From Prasinococcaceae sp. CCMP 1430 (lineage: Eukaryota > Plantae > Prasinodermophyta): DNA of 64,000 bases. Position 1 is the stretch's first letter; the number at the start of each line of letters is the position of its first letter. Of this stretch, positions 654 through 17,063 are shown piece by piece. Where the stretch lies: positions 8,799 through 72,798 of the forward strand of contig RQSC01000125.1 in NCBI GenBank assembly GCA_013416795.1. The letters are read 5' to 3'. Under the pieces are notes generated by a model. The model saw nothing but the letters and a program-made list of their open reading frames with translations, was not told the DNA's origin and did no database searches. Made by a program: the position numbers and the translations under genes.

Positions 654-3356
654 CTAGTTCTGTACCCACACGCACCACTCATCGCCAGACGCGGCGATGT
701 CCCACTTGTTGGACACTTCGCGCGCGCGCTCGTCCATGTGCGGGCTGAAGTCCCCAGGGCCGATCTTGACGATGAGCGCGCCACCGTCAATCATGGCGGC
801 GTAGTGTTCAGCGTCCACGCCCAAAATCTTGACCGACGAGCGCGAGTGAATGCGCAACTTCTTGCGCAGGTCCATGAGCGCAAGAATGCCGCCACGCAGG
901 TTGCCGTCGTACAGATGGTCGGTGAAGACCGTGGGCGTGCCCGGGTGCGTCAGGATGTAGGCGTAGCCTTGCGCAATGCCATGCGACGGGAAGGGCCAGT
1001 GATTGAGCGTGCTGCCCGTGTCGTGGTTGTCGATGAAGGTGACCGCCCTGCTCGGCCAGAAGCCCAGCACACCCGGCGGCCTCCCCGCGGGATCGATGAG
1101 GCGCCAGTACTCACGGCGGCCGATCGCCTCCTGGAGGACGGCCTTGGTGGTGAAGTCGAAGGCTCCGCTGCGACCGCCGGTCGAGTCGATCCAATTGATG
1201 GTGCGCTGCCTGTGCGCGTTCTGGTTGTAGTCGAGCACGCCCTCCGTGTACGAGCACGTGTCCCAGAACTCGCCCACGACCATCTTGGGCGCCGGGTGGG
1301 TGTTGGCGATGTACTCGCCCGTGTATTTGCCCGGGTAGCCCTTGACATAGTCGAAGCGCCATCCCTCGTAGCCGACGTCACTCCGGAGATAGTTGAGCCA
1401 TTCAGAGATGTCCCTCCGCACGGTATCGTTCGTGTGGTCGAGGTTCGGCGCGGCGGTGAAGTTCTCCTCCTCCTTCGCCCTGCCAGTGCCACCGAACATG
1501 CCGGAGTCGGCAGTGATGGCCCACGTGCCCCAGTTCATCCTGCCATGGTACTGGTTCCAGCGTCCCTGGCTGTCCTGCCCTTGCGCGCACCGGTGATTCA
1601 CGACGATGTCCGCCAAAGGAATGATGCCCTCGTCACGCACTGTGTTCAGGCAATCGCGCAGGCTCTGCTCGCTACCGTACTCCGAGTTGAGGTTCCACAG
1701 GTCCCCTGGGAGGTACCCCTGATCGGACACGGACTGTGACGGCGGTGGCAGCCACATCGCGGTGACGCCCTGCCCCGCGATCTCCTTGACCGAGCCCCGC
1801 AGGTTGTCGTAGTAGTTTCCGCGCCAGCTCTCCCAGTTGAACGCCTGCAACAAGATCTCGTAGCCGGTGCCGGTCGCCTGGTAGGCAGGCGCCTCCTCCT
1901 CGACCTCGACAGCCTCCTGCTGGAAGCCCACGGGAGGCGCTTCCGGCGGGGGGGGCGCGACGGGGGGCTCGAGGAGCTCGAGCGGCAGGGCGGGGGCCTC
2001 TTGTGCAGCGGCTGCCGCAATCTTGCTGACTTCGATGCCCTTGATGAGGCGCTGCAGCGCCGCCGCCGCCTCGTCGCTCGCCACCTGCTGCGCGGAGAGG
2101 TTGAGCTCGGCGAACTCGAGCTGGCCTGTGAGCGCCTCGATCTCGTCCTGGAGCGCGCCCGCCTCGACGGCCTCGTTGACCTGCGCCTGCACGGAGTTGA
2201 GCTCTGCCAGGGCCATGTCAGCGGCCGCGAGCGCCGTCCGCGCCTGATCGGCCCTCTCCTTGAGCTCCCTCCTCTCTTTGACGACCGCCGCGCCCTCGTC
2301 GTCCGCGGAGCGGATGAGGTCCTCCGCAACCATAATCTGATCCTTCAGCACGCCCGCCGTTCGCTCGCTCTCGCTGATGGTGCCGATGACGCTCTCGGCG
2401 AGCTGGGCGTCAATCTGCGCGGCCTCCCTGGTGATCGGACCCTCCTCCTGCTCCTTGGTCGACACGGGCGGGGGCTCCATGATCTGATCGCTCCCCGGCA
2501 GCTTGCCAAAGATGGCCGGCATGGTGCTGCGCGAGGTCTTGCGAGGGTTGAGGAGCAGCACGATGACCTGGCGCAGCGCATCGAAGCTCGACTCGGGCAC
2601 CTGCGTGCCGTCCTCCCGCAGGATGTCGAAGGTGTCCACCACCTTCCCCGTCGCGCGATCGGTGCTCACCGACGCGTTGAAGAGGCGCATGCCAAAGGTG
2701 GTCATCTCGGCGATGATCTTGGCGAGCAGCGCGCCCTGGTCGAAGTCCACGGCCACGGTGGATATGGTCAGGCGCGTGAGTCCCTTGGCGCCCATCGCGT
2801 CGTTGCGCAGCTGCACGCTGATGCCCTTGGACGCGTCGTAGATGACCATGCGATCGGTCAGCGCGCGGCGCGTGGCCTTGGGCAGCTGCTTGAAGTCCTC
2901 CTTGAGCAGGTACGCCGCGCGCACGGGCGAGGACGCCCTCACCGTCGCGCCGCGCCGCCTGTCGGTGATCAGCGCGATCTCGCCGAAGTACCCGCCCTTG
3001 CGGTAGCGCATGAGCGGCGAGTTCTCGCCGCCCTTGTCCTCGCGAAAGGCGAACGCCTCGCCCTCCATGAGCATGTAGAAGCGCTCGCCCACGTTGCCCT
3101 GCGTGACGATGTTCTCGCCCGCCTGGAAGTCGGCCACGTACAGCCGGCTGCGCACGAGCTCGACGGCCCTATCGTCGAGCGTGGCGAAGAGCGGCACCGA
3201 GCGCACGAACGAGGAGTCCACGGCGCTCTCGCTGTCGCTCTCGCTCTCGCTGTCGCTGAAGTCGAACCCCGCCGCGGCCGCGATCGGCTTCAGGTGCTTC
3301 TGCTGCCACCACCGCCGCTCCTCGCCGCGCCGCCGCGCCGCCGCGCGCGCGGGCGC
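654..3356 (-). CDS. Alpha-amylase (GH13, plant AMY2/AMY3-like catalytic domain) with N-terminal cNMP-binding domain, ACT-like domain and coiled coil; start uncertain (N at 3357)
   Basis: One uninterrupted ORF. Catalytic motifs GWRFDYVKG, VGEFWD, FIDNHDTGS; also YEILLQAFNWES and DIVVNHRC. cNMP motifs IVTQGNVGERFYMLMEG and GGYFGEIALITDRRRGATVRA. ACT-like DQGALLAKIIAEMTTFGMRLFNASVSTD...VVDTFDI. Confidence 0.92.
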   Translation of the reverse strand, partial: APARAAARRRGEERRWWQQKHLKPIAAAAGFDFSDSESESDSESAVDSSFVRSVPLFATLDDRAVELVRSRLYVADFQAGENIVTQGNVGERFYMLMEGEAFAFREDKGGENSPLMRYRKGGYFGEIALITDRRRGATVRASSPVRAAYLLKEDFKQLPKATRRALTDRMVIYDASKGISVQLRNDAMGAKGLTRLTISTVAVDFDQGALLAKIIAEMTTFGMRLFNASVSTDRATGKVVDTFDILREDGTQVPESSFDALRQVIVLLLNPRKTSRSTMPAIFGKLPGSDQIMEPPPVSTKEQEEGPITREAAQIDAQLAESVIGTISESERTAGVLKDQIMVAEDLIRSADDEGAAVVKERRELKERADQARTALAAADMALAELNSVQAQVNEAVEAGALQDEIEALTGQLEFAELNLSAQQVASDEAAAALQRLIKGIEVSKIAAAAAQEAPALPLELLEPPVAPPPPEAPPVGFQQEAVEVEEEAPAYQATGTGYEILLQAFNWESWRGNYYDNLRGSVKEIAGQGVTAMWLPPPSQSVSDQGYLPGDLWNLNSEYGSEQSLRDCLNTVRDEGIIPLADIVVNHRCAQGQDSQGRWNQYHGRMNWGTWAITADSGMFGGTGRAKEEENFTAAPNLDHTNDTVRRDISEWLNYLRSDVGYEGWRFDYVKGYPGKYTGEYIANTHPAPKMVVGEFWDTCSYTEGVLDYNQNAHRQRTINWIDSTGGRSGAFDFTTKAVLQEAIGRREYWRLIDPAGRPPGVLGFWPSRAVTFIDNHDTGSTLNHWPFPSHGIAQGYAYILTHPGTPTVFTDHLYDGNLRGGILALMDLRKKLRIHSRSSVKILGVDAEHYAAMIDGGALIVKIGPGDFSPHMDERAREVSNKWDIAASGDEWCVWVQN

Positions 3357-6164: not shown

Positions 6165-7310
6165 TTAGTTATTAGACCGGGACATCTCCCTTTCGAGGTG
6201 TCGCTCGATGTGGCTCGCGGCGAACCAGCGGTGCATCACATCCTTGCGCACGGCCGCCGCCAGCTCCAGTCCGGATCCGTCATCGCTGCTGTCTTCGCCA
6301 TCCCCCGCCCCAGCGGGCCCGCCATAGAGTTGATCGGCCCCAAAGCAGGCGTAGCTCGGCGGGTGAACGACTGTCGCCTCGGTAGCGCCAGCGCGGGCCA
6401 CCAGCGGCACCGAGGCGCTGGTAATTCCTCCGGCCACGACCTCGCAGCCCGTGCTGTCGAGCTGCTCACGGAGCCGCCTCACCTTGTCCCCCATCGCCCG
6501 CACGTTGTACTCCCATCTGCCCGGGTTGACCGCCATCGCGACGACGCGGTCGGGAGTGCAGCCCCGCAGCGCCAGGTAGTGCAGCAGCTCATGAGGGTTC
6601 GTCCCAGGCAGCAGCGCCACGCCCACGCGCTCGAAGCCCATGTGTCGACAGGCGTCTAGCGCTGCGGCCACCGCCCCGGCGATGAAGTCAGAGTCGCCAG
6701 CCGCCGACCGGGGATCTCGCGCGTAGCCCTCCACGTGAATCGTAATGTCGCGCACCCCTGCCGCCGCCAGGCGGGGCGCGAACGTCGCCACGCTGCGGGG
6801 CGTGCAGTACATGTGCGCCTCCACGGCCAGCAGAGCCGCGGCCTCTTCGACGTGGGAGAAATCGAGCGAGGACATGTCGTCTACCCCCATTCGCGCGTCG
6901 AGCTTCCCGTCGTGGAGCCACAGAACTCCGGCGTCGTAGCGCGCGTCGCGTAACACGCGCGCCGACACTCCGAGGTGAGGACGCTCCGCCGTAAACGGCG
7001 GCGCGAGCGTCGCTCGCAGCGCCGGGCGCACGGTGCGGGCGGGCCGCGCAGCAGCCTCTCTCNNNNNNNNNNNNNNNNNNNNNNNNNNNNNNNNNNNNNN
7101 NNNNNNNNNNNNNNNNNNNNNNNNNNNACCCGGTGCCAGGCACACGCGCGCGCGCGCGCGCGCGCGCGCGCGCGCATGCGCTCTGATGGCGAACGCGCCG
7201 AGCGAAGGGGCGCGCGCAGCGGCGCGCGCCCCCTTCGCTTCGCACACCCCCGCGCTCGCGTTGAAATCACATCTAAAGTAAATACGTATCACGCGTACCC
7301 ACGGGAGCAC
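6165..7310 (-). CDS. Divergent ribulose-phosphate 3-epimerase-like TIM-barrel protein, probably catalytically inactive; 5' end spans a gap
   Basis: RPE motifs in the correct order: LAPPFTAERPHLG (~IAPSILSADFANLG), LHDG (~VMDG), EAHMY (~DVHLM), ITIHVE, GVALLPGT (~GLALNPAT), DRVVAMAVNPG, DKVRRLR, VVAGGIT (~VDGGIN), ARAGA. Confidence 0.75.
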   Translation of the reverse strand: MLPWVRVIRIYFRCDFNASAGVCEAKGARAAARAPSLGAFAIRAHARARARARARVCLAPGXXXXXXXXXXXXXXXXXXXXXXREAAARPARTVRPALRATLAPPFTAERPHLGVSARVLRDARYDAGVLWLHDGKLDARMGVDDMSSLDFSHVEEAAALLAVEAHMYCTPRSVATFAPRLAAAGVRDITIHVEGYARDPRSAAGDSDFIAGAVAAALDACRHMGFERVGVALLPGTNPHELLHYLALRGCTPDRVVAMAVNPGRWEYNVRAMGDKVRRLREQLDSTGCEVVAGGITSASVPLVARAGATEATVVHPPSYACFGADQLYGGPAGAGDGEDSSDDGSGLELAAAVRKDVMHRWFAASHIERHLEREMSRSNN

Positions 7311-7357
7311 TGGAAGATGCGTTTTGATGCGGATGCGGGCGCGTGCCCCTTCGTTCG

Positions 7358-8530
7358 ATGGGGCGTATCAAAGCGCATGCGCGCGCGCGTGTGCCGCGCG
7401 GCGTGTGCCGGCCACGCGGCGCGAGACCGCGAGGCTTGGCATCAGCGGCCATCGCTACGGTCGCGGCCGACGCGGCCCCGGCGCCGCGCCCCATCCAGAT
7501 CATCCCCAGCGTCCTCCCGGCGGACTGGGCCAACATGGGCCAGTGCGTCAAGGACCTCGAGGAGGCCGGCGTGGATCGCATCCAGTTCGGTGCGTGGCGC
7601 GTCGCCCCTGCTCCGCCCGCGAGCGACGCGCGCGGCGCGAAGCGGTGCGTGCTGACACCCGAAACCCCTCCTCGCTCACGTCCGCGTGCTTGCTGCCCGC
7701 AGACGTGATGGACGGCAACTTCGTCCCGAACCTGACCTTCGGCCCCGAGATGATCGCGGCGTGCCGCAAGTACTGCTCGACCCCCTTCGAGACCCAGCTC
7801 ATGGTGACGAACTACAACAGCGACACGATGCTCGAGGAGTACGTCGAGGCGACCAAGGGCCCCAATGGCGAGCCGGGCGTGGTCATCGTCCACGTTGAGG
7901 CGTGCGTGCACCTGCACCGCACCCTTGCGAAGATCCGCCAGATGGGCGGCTCGCCCTCGGTCGCGCTCAACCCCCACACGCCGGCCGAGATGGTGCTCAA
8001 CGTCCTCGACATGGTCGACCACGTCCTCGTCATGACCGTCAACCCGGGGTTCGGCGGCCAGGCCTACATCCCCACCATGCTCGACAAGATCTCCCGGATC
8101 CGTGCTGCCGCCGACGCGAAGGGGTTCGCCATTGACATCGAGGTACGTGCCGTCGGCGGTCGCCGCCGGGCCGCGCGAACCCGTCTTGCCAGCGGCTCGG
8201 TGGCTGCGTGCGTGCGCCGGCACCTGCAGGCGCATGCACGCTTTGGCGGAGGGAACCCCGCCAGCTCTGTCGCGGATCGCGTGCGAGCGCAACGCTGACC
8301 TGACGCGCCGCCCCTCTCCGCGCGACTTCACGCAGGTCGACGGCGGCATCAAGGCGGACTGGACCATCTCGCAGTGCGCGGCCGCCGGTGCCAACTGCTT
8401 CATTGCCGGCAGCGGCATGTTTGCCTACCCCACGCTCAAGGAGGGGTGCGACGAGCTCCGCAAGGTGGCCGAGGAGGCGCGCGAGGGCAAGGTGCTTGAG
8501 AAGCCCACGCCTGAGGTCGTCGCAGCCTAG
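7358..8530 (+). CDS. RPE: Ribulose-phosphate 3-epimerase family protein (exons 7358-7589, 7703-8142, 8336-8530)
   Basis: Spliced product has IIPSVLPADW, RIQF|DVMDGNFVPNLTFGP, VALNPHTP, VLVMTVNPGFGGQ, IE|VDGGI, FIAGSGMF. GT-AG introns 7590-7702 and 8143-8335 restore the frame exactly. Start ATG 7358 is inferred. Confidence 0.93.
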
Positions 8531-8603
8531 GTTTTTAATAGCCTCCTTCGTGCTACTGCATGTATAGCGCGCACAAATGTCTGTGCATGCGCTCAGGGCG
8601 GCC

Positions 8604-10994
8604 CTACTGCGCCGCGCCGTTTCGCTGCGCGGCGTCGGCGAGGGCCGCGGCGATTCTCGCCTCGCGCGCGGCGCCCGCGATGGCCGCGCCAATCCTCGCC
8701 TCGGCCGTGAGGCCGTCATCCACCGGCGGCGCGGGGAGCGCCGCGAGCGCAAAGTTGTAGTCCTTTCCTTCGGCGTTGTCCCAGCGCTCGCCCTCGCCGT
8801 CGGTGAACGCCACGTTGAGCTCGCGCGCGCCCTCGGGCGCCCGCAGGGTGACTGCCCAATAGCCGCCGCCCTGTTTCTCCATCGGCAGGCGCGAGATGGC
8901 CGCGCTCCAGCCGTCGAAGCCAACCTGCGCGTGCATCTCCTCGGCGCCCGCGAGCGGCCCGTCCGCCCAGGCGAGCAGCCGCACGACCTTCCCCGGCAGC
9001 GGCTGTGGCGGCAGCACTGCCGCGCGCACGTCGTCGAGCGCGCGCGCCTCCGCGGCTTGGAGCGCCTCGTCGCGCGCTTCCAGGTAGTCGTTGGCTGCCC
9101 GGCCGATGTCCACGCAAAAGGTGTCCGCGGCGGCGGCGGCGAGCTCCGCGGCACGCATGGCACCCTCCACACCCCACCACGGCTGCGCCACCCACAGCGC
9201 CGCCTGTCGTCGCGCCGCGCACGCAGCAGAGGCGGGAGACACGGCTTCCGTCAGCGCAAGGCGCGCCAAAGCTTGTGTTGATGAGTTTGCGTGCGTGCGC
9301 GGAGATGCGCACGCGCGCGCGCGCGTGTGTGCGCGCGCGCGGGGGCGTGCATTCAGAGGCCCGCCACGCACCTCTGGCAGCCTTTTCGCCCACGCTTCCT
9401 CCGAGTGCGTCGCCCCTTTCACGAGGTTGGAGCGCACCCGCGCGGACAGTCCCGCGCCACCCATCCACGCCACGCACTCGCCGTACATGCGGCTGAGCAT
9501 ATCGTCCAAGTCGTGGCGGTCCTCGGAGCCCTCCCGCGTCGAGTACTCCTTCGTGCCCATGGCGATGTACATGCGCGCGGGCCAGCGCGCGTCCACCTGT
9601 GAAGAAGGTGCGCGCGCGCGTCAGCGCGCCGCTGACTTGCGGGGGATTCCAGGCGCCGCATGGCGTGCCCGCGGTCGCACGCGCGCGCACAATGCACGCG
9701 CGCTCACGCGCGCGACGAGCTGTTCGCGCGCGCACTCGCAAGGCAGGGCGCACGCAATATGCGTGGGCACGCACGCGTGCACACACGGACGCACCGACGA
9801 GAGCCGCGTCTTGACCCTCTCGAGCAGGCGCCCCTCCTCCACCCAGAAGCTGGGCGACTCGAAGATACACGCCGCGACGTCGTCCGGCCTACAAAGAGCG
9901 GCGCCAGCGGTGCGCTGTGTGAGGCGGTGCGACGCCAGCGCGCGCGCTGCGCATCCACGAGACGCGCGTGCACACAGGCGCACGCGCGCTTGCGCCGCGC
10001 GCGCAAGGCAGCTCCCCACACACATCAACATACACGAGCTTGCACGAGCGCTCGTTCGGACGTTCGCCCACGCACCTCTCCATGGCCATGTGCAGCGCGG
10101 CGACGCCGCCAAAGGACGACCCACCGAAGGCGCGGAGCGCGGGCTCGTTGGCGCCGAGGCCTGGGAAGGCCTCGGCGAGCGCCGGCGCAACGTGGTCGAG
10201 GACGAAGCCCAGGTGCTCCGAGATGCCACCGCCAGGCCAGTCGGCGGCCTCCGGGCGCATGTCGCCTGGGCCCATGCCTGGGCGGTACGGAAGGTACTCG
10301 TACGGGCGCCTGCGAAGGAGCGGCGGGCTGGGGAGCGTCATGTTCTCGCCGTACGGGGCGAGCGGTGGTGGGGGTGGGGGCGGAGTGGGGCCGAGCCCGG
10401 GGTTCAGCCCAACATCGCCGGGGTTTTCGCCAACAAGGTGGATGGNAGAGGCCTGGGATGCGGGAGGTGCGGGTGCGGGATGGGGGAGGAGGGAAGGAGA
10501 AAGGAGGGCATGAGTGAGCGGCGGTACGTGCGTGTGTGCGCGAGCGCGCACTCGACGTCGTGTCGGCACGGGCGAGCACACGCGCGAGCTTGCGCAGCGC
10601 GCGTCGCGCACCTCGCCCCGGCGTTATCTATTGCCGCCACGGCGAACGGCGGCGCCGCTCCTGCCGCTATGAGCGCGCTCGCGGCCTCCGCCGCGCGCCA
10701 GCTCGAGCCGCTGTACGACTCCTCGTCGTAGAAGACGTTCTGGCCGTCGAGCAGCAGCAGCACCGGCACGCGGCCGCGCATGGCCGCCGCGGCGCTGCCG
10801 AACGCCGGCGGCAGCCACGCGCGCACGCGGCGCGAGTTGCCCTCGCACGGGCCGTGCACCTGCGAGCGCGTGCGCGCGCGTGCGTCGCGCGGAGGTCAGC
10901 GGGAGGGGACGGCCCAACGCGCCCACGCCGGCGCTGTGCGGCTCTTTCTGCCCCCCTGGTCACGCACGCGCGTACGCACACGAGCGCGCTCTCT

Positions 10995-11039
<45 letters not shown>

Positions 11040-11296
11040 ACCGTGATCTCGCGGAGCGTGCCGCCTGCGAGCGGCACTCCGCAGCCCTCGTCCGCCATCG
11101 ACCACTGCGCCCGCGCGCCCGCGCTGTTGAGGGGCACCGGCACGGCCGGCGGCAGCGAGGTGCCCCCGCCGAAGACCCCGCCGAACATGCCCGCGCACCG
11201 CGCGCGGCGTATGCCCCACCCGCCGCGCAGGACCGCCCACCCCGCCGGGTGGGCCGCAGCAGCGCACCGCGGTTCATGCGGGGCTGCTGCGTGCAT
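8604..11296 (-). CDS. Alpha/beta-hydrolase (putative esterase, Fes/IroE-like) with C-terminal starch-binding CBM (CBM53/CBM25-like); six exons
   Basis: Exons ~11296-11042, 10859-10612, 10309-10076, 9888-9795, 9596-9372, 9203-8604, with canonical GT-AG borders. Motifs PVLLLLDGQNVF, AIDNAG, GGSSFGG (nucleophile elbow), ESPSFW, GATHSEEAWAKRLP; then VGFDGW...GYWAVTL...LNVAFTDGEGERWDNAEGKDY. Confidence 0.85.
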
Positions 11297-11583
11297 GCTC
11301 GAAATCAGTGGTCAGAGCGCATGCGCAACGTGCGGGGCCAGGCCAAAACCTTAATCTCAAGTGCTAGGGTTTACAATGAGCGCCCACCGGCAACGGATGC
11401 GAATTGATGTTCATCATGATGGTGATGGCATGCGGTATGCGCACGCGCGACAGATGCAACCTTAACCCGTCCACCCATGGCCGCGCAGGGGGGAAAATGT
11501 GCTGTTGCAGTCGCGTGCGAGTGCGGCCCCAGCGGCGCGCGCCACAGCTGCGCGGGCGGGGCGCGGTGGGGGTCCCTCCCGCG

Positions 11584-15463: not shown

Positions 15464-16034
15464 CAACGCGGAGGGCTCTACGTGCAATCCCGCAGCAGGC
15501 GTCACCTCCCCCCTCTCCCTCCCAACGAGCCACCCCGAGCTGCCCCGCAGCAACGCGCTTAGAGACCCCCCCGTCGGGCCGTTAGTCAACCCTCCAGAGT
15601 GCACGCACGCGCAAGCGGGGCCCCTGCGCGCGCGCAGCGCGCTAGCGCGGCGGGCCGCTCACGGCGTCCTTCGCCTCCCTGCCCCATCCCAACCTCCCTC
15701 TTCGCCCCCCTCTCTCTCGCGCACACCCCCACACGCTGCCCCGCGGGCCATGCTCGCCGCGCGCGCCAGCTGCCTGGAATGCTCTCCCGTGGTTACATGT
15801 GCCCATACATCACATGATATGTTTAAACCCGAAATGTTGGAGGAGCCAGGCGTGCGAGCAGCGCGCGCACACTGTGCGCGCGAGCGTGCGTGCGTGTGTG
15901 TGCGTGTGGGTGTGCGTGTGGGTGTGTGGGTGTGTGGGTGTGCGCCGTGCCACAGCGCCCGCGCGTCGGCGCGCCCGCGCGCTATGTGCGCGCGCGCGGC
16001 GTGCGCGTGCACCGCTCGCGCGTGGCGCGCGTGC

Positions 16035-16079
<45 letters not shown>

Positions 16080-16218
16080 GCGCGCGCGCGCGCGCGCGCA
16101 CACACACATACACACGTGCTTGTGTGTGCACGCTCCCCCCCGCACACACGCGCGCGCACGCGCGCGCTCGCGCGCATGTGCTGACGCGCTCTCGCGCTCT
16201 CGCTCGCCGCGTCCTTAG

Positions 16219-16412
16219 GGTCATCCGCGCCCTGCGCCTCGGCGCGCGCGTACATGATGTCCTTCTCGGGGATGGCCGACGAGCTCGGCTGGGCGCCGCG
16301 CCCCCCCGTGGTGGCGCCGGCCGACCGCGCGCGCGTGCTGCGCGCGTGGGAGGTGCGCGCGCGACCGCGCGCGACCGCGCGTCCGCGACCGCGTTGGCGT
16401 GGGAATGTGAAT

Positions 16413-16452
<40 letters not shown>

Positions 16453-17063
16453 TCACTCACGCGCGCGCGCACGCTCACACACACACACACACGCGCGCGC
16501 ATGCGCTCGCGCACTAACGCACACGCGCCAAAACACACGCACGCGCGCGCGCACGCGTGCACACACACGCACAGGCGCGCGCGCGCGCCGCGGGGAGGGA
16601 GGAGGTGGGCCTCGGCGAGGCCAGCCTGCCGTTCGCCGACATCCGGAGGATGTCGCCCGAGGAGTTCGTGGAGGTGCGTGCGTGCGTGTGTGCGCGCGCC
16701 CGTGTGTGGGCGTGTGCCCTCGCGTGCGCGCGCGCGCGCGCGCGCGCGCGTGTGCTTGCGCGCGTGTGTGAGGTCGCCGGCAATGCTGACATCGCGCGGG
16801 CGCACTACACGCACTCACGCGCACACACAGCTGCTCCACTCCGGCGTGGGTGCGGCCGGCGTGGTGGCGGGCTCCAACTACCGCTTCGGCTACCGCGCCG
16901 CCGGTGGCGCCGACGAGCTGCGCGAGCTCGCCGAGGCGCGCGGGATGGCCGTGGAGATCGTGGACCTCGTCGGCGACGACGAAGGGGGGGGAGGCGGCGA
17001 CGAGGGTGCGCGAGCGCGCGAGCGCGCAAACACACACACACACACACACACAGAGAGACACAG

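What the first reader, a model, noticed from the sequence alone, without database searches (positions are those of the whole stretch)
6165..8530. Head-to-head pair of RPE-fold genes: an apparent pseudoenzyme and a non-canonical partner
Seen: the minus-strand gene keeps the full RPE motif order but loses most metal/catalytic ligands. The H-x-D-x-M-D-G strand reads V-L-W-L-H-D-G (His->Val, catalytic Asp->Trp), VDGG becomes VAGG (second catalytic Asp lost), and the phosphate loop NPGFGGQ becomes NPGRWEY. Only the second His (EAHMY) survives, and there is an added acidic C-tail. Its 5' end lies at most ~200 bp from the divergent RPE, implying a shared bidirectional promoter. Known: RPE uses 2 His + 2 Asp around a divalent metal and is oligomeric. 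Inference: a co-expressed regulatory or scaffold subunit forming hetero-oligomers with RPE, i.e. an undescribed enzyme/pseudoenzyme module. The two genes are far too divergent for a recent tandem duplicate.
Basis: partly seen in the sequence, partly recalled or inferred. Interest (0 to 1): 0.75.

Follow-up and report, generated by a model that had tools for sequence, protein, structure and literature searches.

The report
Dead epimerase paralog beside plastid RPE
In the green picoalga Prasinoderma coloniale, a Calvin-cycle sugar epimerase gene sits head-to-head with a look-alike that has lost the catalytic residues, and this undescribed look-alike family stays next to the same enzyme gene in at least three distant marine green algae, which suggests the two work together.

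Summary
The sequence observation holds. The minus-strand gene (6165 to the gap) has an RPE fold. It has lost both catalytic Asp, one of the two metal His, and two of three phosphate loops.

It is not a lone oddity. An exhaustive HMMER search found a small family at 26-42% identity. All members are unnamed, 'hypothetical', or auto-labelled epimerase. They come from Pycnococcus/Pseudoscourfieldia, MMETSP transcripts and marine metagenomes. The family has its own conserved motifs and a conserved C-terminal helix.

Linkage to RPE is conserved:
- An uncultured marine alga (L002) has the same head-to-head pair, 268 bp apart.
- In Pycnococcus and Pseudoscourfieldia the two genes carry consecutive NCBI ids on the same contig.

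The partner has Gln at both metal-His positions. This is not peculiar to the alga. It is the standard rpe type of Prochlorococcus and marine Synechococcus, and several marine algae also carry it.

The gap hides the minus gene's start codon, so the ORF read through the Ns is an artefact.

A catalytically dead RPE paralog under selection and linked to RPE is well supported. A heteromer or regulatory role is inferred and was not tested. The scan had not noted this before on other DNA.

The parts
6165..7062 (-). RPE-like pseudo-epimerase gene. A single exon encodes residues 32-327 of the protein, with the stop codon at 6165-6167. The 5' end runs into the gap.
   Evidence: PF00834 at 28.8 bits. Colinear tblastn match to P0001, 98% identity over 296 residues. 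AF2 model with Foldseek top hits all RPE.
7063..7127 (.). Assembly gap. It must contain the start codon and about 31 codons (or more) of the minus-strand gene, probably a transit peptide. Its true length exceeds the nominal 65 nt.
   Evidence: Residues 1-31 of P0001 and 1-57 of P0133 have no match at 7128-7310. A (GC)n tract abuts the gap.
7128..7357 (.). Divergent intergenic region and candidate bidirectional promoter. It has a (GC)n tract at about 7143-7175 and an AT-richer core at about 7255-7320.
   Evidence: Read directly from the sequence and the repeat scan. The equivalent spacer in L002 is 268 bp.
7358..7589 (+). RPE exon 1: Ala/Arg-rich presequence plus beta-1 and the start of beta-2. 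The first in-frame ATG is at 7358, so the true start is uncertain.
   Evidence: The first ~27 residues of the published model are not encoded here.
7590..7702 (+). Intron 1 (GT..AG). It splits the codon of the catalytic Asp.
   Evidence: P0002 reads ...IQFDVMDG... across the junction.
7703..8142 (+). RPE exon 2. It carries DVMDG, ETQLMV, HVE, NPHT and NPGFGGQ.
   Evidence: PF00834 at 137 bits. 100% identical to P0002.
8143..8335 (+). Intron 2 (GT..AG).
8336..8530 (+). RPE exon 3 (VDGG, AGSG, C-terminus), with the stop codon at 8528-8530.

Best explanation
The minus-strand gene encodes a member of a small, previously undescribed family of RPE-derived (beta/alpha)8-barrel proteins found in early-branching marine green algae.

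Shown:
- The family keeps the RPE scaffold.
- Mostly hydrophobic or aromatic residues replace both acid/base Asp, one metal His, two of the three intermediate-stabilising Met and two phosphate loops (Val, Trp, Tyr, Leu, Trp). It cannot be a ribulose-phosphate 3-epimerase.
- It has gained a conserved C-terminal amphipathic helix with the motif V-R-x-D-x-x-H-R-W-x-A-A.
- It has been kept directly beside the alga's picocyanobacterial-type (Gln/Gln) RPE in three deep lineages. In two of them the pair is head-to-head across a spacer of about 270 bp.

Inferred:
- Both genes are transcribed from a shared bidirectional promoter.
- Both proteins carry plastid presequences.
- The dead paralog acts as a non-catalytic partner of the hexameric RPE, as a regulatory, stabilising or scaffolding subunit. 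RPE's ability to pair with its own kind would let the paralog join it.
For: Fold and homology:
- Pfam 28.8 bits; hhalign 97.3% probability.
- AF2 model with pLDDT 76.9 and pTM 0.76. Every top Foldseek hit is RPE, E about 3e-10, target-normalised TM about 0.77.

Dead site: alignments, read against the canonical 2 Asp + 2 His tetrad, three Met and hexamer described in bioRxiv 10.1101/2022.09.29.510120.

Conserved family:
- 7 further 50%-identity clusters, 6 at E 1e-44 to 3e-22 and one at E 3e-7.
- MMETSP transcripts exist for Pycnococcus and for one other alga, so the family is expressed.
- Family-specific motifs are shared.

Linkage:
- L002 has the head-to-head pair with a Gln/Gln RPE that is 72% identical, while the partners are only 26% identical.
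- Consecutive ids on the same contig: XRB19313/XRB19314, GHP07239/GHP07238 and XRB04527/XRB04528.
- L002 has a second paralog 5.8 kb further on.
Against: - No interaction, co-expression or activity data exist.
- AlphaFold-Multimer was not available.
- Picocyanobacteria run the same Gln/Gln RPE without any such partner.
- Chloropicon has the Gln/Gln RPE, but no named family member was seen there.
- Pycnococcus has a second paralog that is not linked to RPE.
- A conserved, largely hydrophobic pocket with a mostly retained Glu-x-His could be a new ligand site and not merely a filled-in one.
- The within-population dN/dS estimate rests on too few changes to be informative.
Confidence: 0.45

Rival explanations
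1. The protein is a neofunctionalised enzyme or ligand-binding protein. The RPE barrel has been rebuilt into a new pocket lined by Trp/Tyr/Leu with a Glu-x-His and capped by the new C-terminal helix. It binds or converts a different, probably non-phosphorylated or hydrophobic, molecule. The linkage to RPE then reflects a shared pathway or shared regulation, not physical association.
For: The replacement residues are themselves conserved across the family: Trp at the Asp position, Tyr at the Met position, the G-x-W-x-Y loop, and His in 7 of 8 subfamily representatives. The C-terminal helix carries invariant Asp and Arg. The family has persisted with 1-2 copies per genome.
Against: No polar constellation is invariant. 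The His is Tyr in P0151 and the Glu of HxE is missing in P0127. Most invariant positions are structural Gly, Pro, Thr, Leu or Tyr shared with RPE. No candidate substrate is in view.
Confidence: 0.3
2. The protein is functional, but the adjacency is only the inherited footprint of an old inverted tandem duplication, possibly moved between algae as a cassette. There is no functional coupling to RPE.
For: The Gln/Gln RPE has a patchy distribution among algae, and RPE genes are known to move laterally (PMC1920508). One Pycnococcus paralog is unlinked.
Against: The partner proteins have diverged to 26-40% identity while staying adjacent in three lineages, and head-to-head with the same ~270 bp spacing in two. 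Microsynteny surviving that much divergence by chance is unlikely.
Confidence: 0.2
3. The gene is a decaying, non-functional duplicate (a pseudogene).
For: Catalytic residues are lost. The gene is missing from the EukProt P. coloniale protein set among the hits.
Against: The ORF is intact for 296 codons. Intact orthologs occur in several species, with shared derived motifs and transcripts.
Confidence: 0.03

Closest known systems
Ribulose-phosphate 3-epimerase (RPE; EC 5.1.3.1; PF00834 / TIGR01163), e.g. Chlamydomonas CrRPE1 (7B1W) and Synechocystis RPE (1TQJ)
   Same: Same (beta/alpha)8 fold and strand order. Retained motifs are DG (of MDG), E-x-H on beta-3, x-V-E on beta-4, P-x-T on beta-5, NPG on beta-6, GG on beta-7 and AGA before beta-8.
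   Different: Both catalytic Asp, the first metal His, two Met, the GGQ loop and the beta-8 Gly-Ser are replaced. It scores 30 bits against the TIGR01163 cut-off of 212.6. It has an extra ~15-20 residue insert after beta-4 and a ~60-residue C-terminal extension with a conserved helix.
Picocyanobacterial-type RPE (the plus-strand neighbour; rpe of Prochlorococcus and marine Synechococcus)
   Same: Homologous barrel. Adjacent in the genome in three algal lineages. Both have Glu two residues before the second metal position.
   Different: The neighbour keeps both Asp, all phosphate loops and the Met residues, and passes TIGR01163 (222 vs 212.6). It has Gln at both His positions and an 8-residue insert between beta-3 and beta-4 that the dead paralog lacks.
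Pseudoenzyme paralogs that partner their active relatives (a general class; comparison from my own knowledge)
   Same: The fold is retained, catalytic residues are lost, the gene is under selection and it is genetically linked to the active paralog.
   Different: No physical or regulatory interaction has been shown here. No RPE-derived pseudoenzyme was found in the literature searches.
RPEL1 / AlsE / SgcE-type RPE-family paralogs
   Same: Members of PF00834.
   Different: Those keep the catalytic Asp pair and metal ligands (AlsE model NF007266; one search shows no significant match for the dead paralog).

Membership tests
RPE (EC 5.1.3.1), minus-strand gene | (beta/alpha)8 RPE fold | tested here: met
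   AF2 pLDDT 76.9. All top Foldseek hits are RPE, E about 3e-10. hhalign 97.3%.
RPE (EC 5.1.3.1), minus-strand gene | Pfam PF00834 gathering score | tested here: met
   28.8 vs 21.1 bits for P. coloniale. Most orthologs fall below the cut-off.
RPE (EC 5.1.3.1), minus-strand gene | NCBIfam TIGR01163 equivalog cut-off | tested here: not met
   30.3 bits vs 212.6.
RPE (EC 5.1.3.1), minus-strand gene | Metal tetrad of 2 His + 2 Asp, with the two Asp as acid/base catalysts | tested here: not met
   The tetrad positions read Val, Trp, His and a gap (or a hydrophobic residue in orthologs), so 1 of 4 is kept. Canonical tetrad per bioRxiv 10.1101/2022.09.29.510120.
RPE (EC 5.1.3.1), minus-strand gene | Three phosphate-binding loops (G-x-G-G-Q, D-G-G, G-S) | tested here: not met
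   G-R-W-E-Y is two residues shorter, only GG is kept, and G-S is replaced.
RPE (EC 5.1.3.1), plus-strand gene | TIGR01163 cut-off, catalytic Asp pair and phosphate loops | tested here: met
   222.2 vs 212.6 bits. DVMDG, VDGG, NPGFGGQ and AGSG are present.
RPE (EC 5.1.3.1), plus-strand gene | Two metal-binding His | tested here: not met
   Gln at both positions. The same holds in all 120 best relatives and in the Prochlorococcus and marine Synechococcus genome hits (337 in all, best 80 listed).
Pseudoenzyme partner of RPE (proposed) | Conserved genomic linkage to the active paralog | tested here: met
   Window, L002, and Pycnococcus/Pseudoscourfieldia by consecutive ids.
Pseudoenzyme partner of RPE (proposed) | Physical association with RPE or an effect on RPE | not testable with these tools
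   No multimer prediction or experiment was available.
Pseudoenzyme partner of RPE (proposed) | Purifying selection | tested here: inconclusive
   Deep conservation of motifs and intact ORFs argues for it. dN/dS from near-identical metagenome variants is 0.15-0.9 on 1-10 changes, and 0.44 over 107 codons.

The most novel reading that the evidence does not exclude
Early-branching marine green algae run their Calvin-cycle epimerase as a mixed complex of an active Gln/Gln (picocyanobacterial-type) RPE and one or two dead RPE paralogs. The paralogs' new C-terminal helix and hydrophobic pocket would sense a metabolite or redox signal, giving a regulatory layer on RPE not known in any phototroph. 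The dead paralog might even be the original plastid RPE, displaced by the incoming picocyanobacterial-type gene and repurposed.
Probability: 0.2. Interest if true: 0.75.

Novelty: new variant of a known kind. Interest (0 to 1): 0.6.

Why it matters
RPE is regarded as a simple, unregulated homo-oligomeric step of the Calvin cycle and the pentose-phosphate pathway. A dedicated, conserved, syntenic dead paralog would be the first RPE-derived pseudoenzyme. It would be a candidate regulator of RuBP regeneration in ecologically important picoalgae.

The work also shows that the RPE of the ocean's most abundant phototrophs, and of several algae, lacks both canonical metal-binding histidines. That raises a testable question about metal use (Fe/Zn versus a harder metal or none) in metal-poor, oxidising surface waters.

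Tried and rejected
- A word-index search with the P. coloniale protein found only its own 98% twin. A word-index search with the family profile found only two proteins, probably because low-complexity GC-rich words saturated the candidate list.
Contigs of P0001, P0125, P0151 and the Pycnococcus genomes could not be fetched, so gene orientation in Pycnococcus is unknown.
- Two viral-contig scans found nothing.
- An hmmsearch of the window's six-frame ORFs found no second family member in the window.
- dN/dS on metagenome variants was uninformative.
- Seven literature searches found no description of either the dead family or the Gln/Gln RPE.
HMM scores give only a weak hint: canonical-type P0130 and P0131 score 35-36 bits, against 30.5 bits or less for Gln/Gln RPEs.
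- The spliced RPE was searched exon by exon by reference. The joined-exon step was left out, and the database protein P0002 was used where a full-length sequence was needed.

Full report
**Organism and gene models**

The window is GC-rich eukaryotic DNA, 59-74% GC. The plus-strand gene is 100% identical over exon 2 to EukProt PRCOL_00006965-RA of Prasinoderma coloniale. This agrees with an earlier scan note naming the genome.

The plus gene has three exons: 7358-7589, 7703-8142 and 8336-8530, with GT..AG introns. I searched the exons separately by reference and never joined them. Where a full-length protein was needed I used the database entry P0002. The first ~27 residues of that published model are not encoded in the window, so the true start of the plus gene is uncertain.

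**The gap, tested first**

The minus-strand ORF is colinear with P0001 (327 aa, 98% identical) from residue 32 to the stop, window 7055 to 6168. Residues 1-31 of P0001, and 1-57 of the longer P0133, have no counterpart at 7128-7310.

The start codon and the presequence therefore lie inside the N run. That run must be longer than its nominal 65 nt. The 381-aa ORF 6165-7310 listed is an artefact of reading N as X. A (GC)n tract abuts the gap and probably broke the assembly. The distance between the two start codons cannot be measured here; nominally it is 231-295 bp plus the unknown gap length.

**Is the minus-strand gene RPE-like and catalytically dead?**

Evidence for the fold:
- Pfam PF00834 at 28.8 bits, cut-off 21.1.
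- PDB phmmer best hit is rice RPE.
- hhalign of the family against RPE profiles gives 97.3% probability, E 1.7e-11 over 182 columns.
- The AF2 model has pLDDT 76.9 and pTM 0.76, with an eight-strand barrel pattern.
- All top Foldseek PDB hits are RPEs, E about 3e-10, target-normalised TM about 0.77.

Canonical RPE is a homo-hexamer. It has a metal held by two Asp and two His, the two Asp act as acid/base catalysts, and three Met stabilise the intermediate (bioRxiv 10.1101/2022.09.29.510120).

In the alignments the protein reads as follows at those positions:

| Canonical position | P. coloniale | Orthologs |
|---|---|---|
| First metal His | Val | Val, Leu or Ser |
| First catalytic Asp | Trp | mostly Trp |
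| Second metal His | His | Tyr in P0151 |
| Second catalytic Asp | deleted | hydrophobic |
| Two of the three Met | changed | one mostly Tyr, the other variable |
| GFGGQ loop | G-R-W-E-Y, two residues shorter | G-x-W-x-Y |
| Beta-8 Gly-Ser | gone | gone |

It scores 30 bits against the TIGR01163 equivalog cut-off of 212.6. It cannot be a ribulose-phosphate 3-epimerase.

**It is a conserved family**

The word-index search found only its own twin. The exhaustive HMMER scan of 1.84 billion representatives found seven further clusters. Six have E 1e-44 to 3e-22 at 37-42% identity, and one has E 3e-7.

Their sources:
- Pycnococcus provasolii and Pseudoscourfieldia marina, with two paralogs each.
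- MMETSP transcripts, which are evidence of expression.
- Marine metagenome contigs.

Named members are called 'hypothetical' or 'uncharacterized' protein; JGI's automatic annotation labels a few 'pentose-5-phosphate-3-epimerase'. No bacterial member appeared.

The family shares derived motifs: R-D-A-R-F-D-x-G-V-L-W-x-x-D-G-x-L-D, L-P-V-E-A-H-L-Y, T-L-Q-V-E, L-P-G-T, L-P-D-R, N-P-G-x-W-x-Y, G-G-I-T and A-R-A-G-A. It also has a C-terminal helix, V-R-x-D-x-x-H-R-W-x-A-A...Y-L-E-R, modelled as one long helix over residues 292-326.

It is not conserved.

**Conserved linkage**

A metagenome scan with the most distant member, P0173 (26% identical to the window protein), returned ten contigs of one uncultured alga. 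The contigs are about 49% GC and carry a chlorophyll a/b-binding protein gene nearby.

In L002 the family gene (10001-11029, +) lies head-to-head with an RPE (8872-9732, -; PF00834 at 211 bits) across 268 bp. That RPE is 72% identical to the window's RPE and has the same Gln/Gln site. A second family paralog, P0202 (37% identical to P0173), lies 5.8 kb further on, at 15490-16683.

In the sequenced genomes the divergent gene and the Gln/Gln RPE carry consecutive identifiers on the same contig:

| Species | Divergent gene | RPE | Contig length |
|---|---|---|---|
| Pseudoscourfieldia marina | XRB19313.1 | XRB19314.1 | 766,343 bp |
| Pycnococcus provasolii | GHP07239.1 (PPROV_000598000) | GHP07238.1 (PPROV_000597900) | 534,558 bp |
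| Pycnococcus provasolii | XRB04527.1 | XRB04528.1 | 684,535 bp |

Adjacency has thus survived while the partner proteins diverged to 26-40% identity. This argues for selection on the arrangement, most simply co-regulation from a shared promoter.

**The partner RPE**

Both metal-binding His are Gln, as R-I-Q-F-D-V-M-D-G and F-E-T-Q-L-M-V. The two Asp, the Met residues and all phosphate loops are intact, and the protein passes TIGR01163 at 222 vs 212.6 bits.

This state is shared widely:
- All 120 best database relatives have it.
- It is the rpe found in 337 species-representative genomes; the 80 best listed are all Prochlorococcus or marine Synechococcus, including streamlined high-light strains.
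- It also occurs in Chloropicon primus and C. roscoffensis, in Pycnococcus, and in algae whose RPE carries a signal-peptide leader.

It is therefore almost certainly an active RPE. That inference rests on my own knowledge that these small genomes carry one rpe; I did not test it here. Because cyanobacteria use it without the dead paralog, the paralog is not a complementing subunit.

**Mechanism**

Shown: a dead RPE-fold family under long-term constraint, syntenic with the Gln/Gln RPE, which probably serves the plastid (an Ala/Arg-rich presequence is the only evidence for targeting).

Inferred: divergent co-transcription, plastid targeting of both proteins (Ala/Arg-rich N-termini), and a non-catalytic partner role built on the self-association surfaces of the RPE fold.

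The main rival is a rebuilt ligand pocket with its own function. The replacement residues are themselves conserved, which fits that rival. However, no polar catalytic constellation is invariant. A plain pseudogene is excluded by the conservation.

**Origin of the family**

The origin is unresolved. The family lacks the 8-residue insert of the Gln/Gln clade and keeps a His where that clade has Gln. Its HMM scores canonical-type RPEs slightly higher than Gln/Gln RPEs. These are only weak hints that it did not arise from the present neighbour.

**Literature**

RPE genes of algae are known to be replaced by lateral transfer (PMC1920508). None of seven searches found a description of an RPE pseudoenzyme or of the Gln/Gln clade.

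Noticed in passing
window 7358-8530 (+); L011-L090: The rpe of Prochlorococcus and marine Synechococcus has Gln at both canonical metal-binding His positions. So does the RPE of Prasinoderma, Pycnococcus, Chloropicon and several algae whose RPE carries a signal-peptide leader. This clade also has an 8-residue insert between beta-3 and beta-4. It was found in 337 species-representative genomes. This may mean a different metal, or none. I found no paper on it.
   Followed up: partly
L002:15490-16683 (-): The uncultured alga has a second, larger paralog of the dead-RPE family (P0202, 397 aa). It is 37% identical to P0173 and carries a ~30-residue insert in the former phosphate loop. It lies 5.8 kb from the RPE, beyond a DnaJ-like ORF and an FMN-dependent (glycolate-oxidase-like) dehydrogenase. 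Pfam does not recognise it.
   Followed up: partly
window 7358-7470 (+): The first ~27 residues of the published model PRCOL_00006965-RA are not encoded anywhere in the window, and the next stretch differs by a 3-residue indel. Either the presequence differs between strains or assemblies, or a first exon lies in the gap.
   Followed up: partly
window 7133-7415: A (GC)n tract next to the gap and imperfect inverted repeats (e.g. 7160-7187 with 7367-7394, 89% complementary) bracket the AT-richer core of the divergent intergenic region. They may be low-complexity chance, or may be related to the promoter.
   Followed up: no
P0136 (Pycnococcus provasolii PPROV_000356200): The unlinked Pycnococcus paralog carries a ~40-residue Ser/Asp-rich acidic insert ahead of the barrel. 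In P. coloniale the acidic stretch instead sits before the C-terminal helix.
   Followed up: no
P0265 (MDP6190733.1): A partial Gln/Gln RPE labelled 'MAG: Gammaproteobacteria bacterium' sits in a 90%-identity cluster whose other members are 293-aa marine metagenome proteins with N-terminal extensions. This may be a binning contaminant.
   Followed up: no
window 654-3356 and 8600-11300: The pair is flanked by starch-metabolism genes: an alpha-amylase fusion, an esterase with a starch-binding module, and a branching enzyme. This comes from earlier scan notes and I did not examine it.
   Followed up: no
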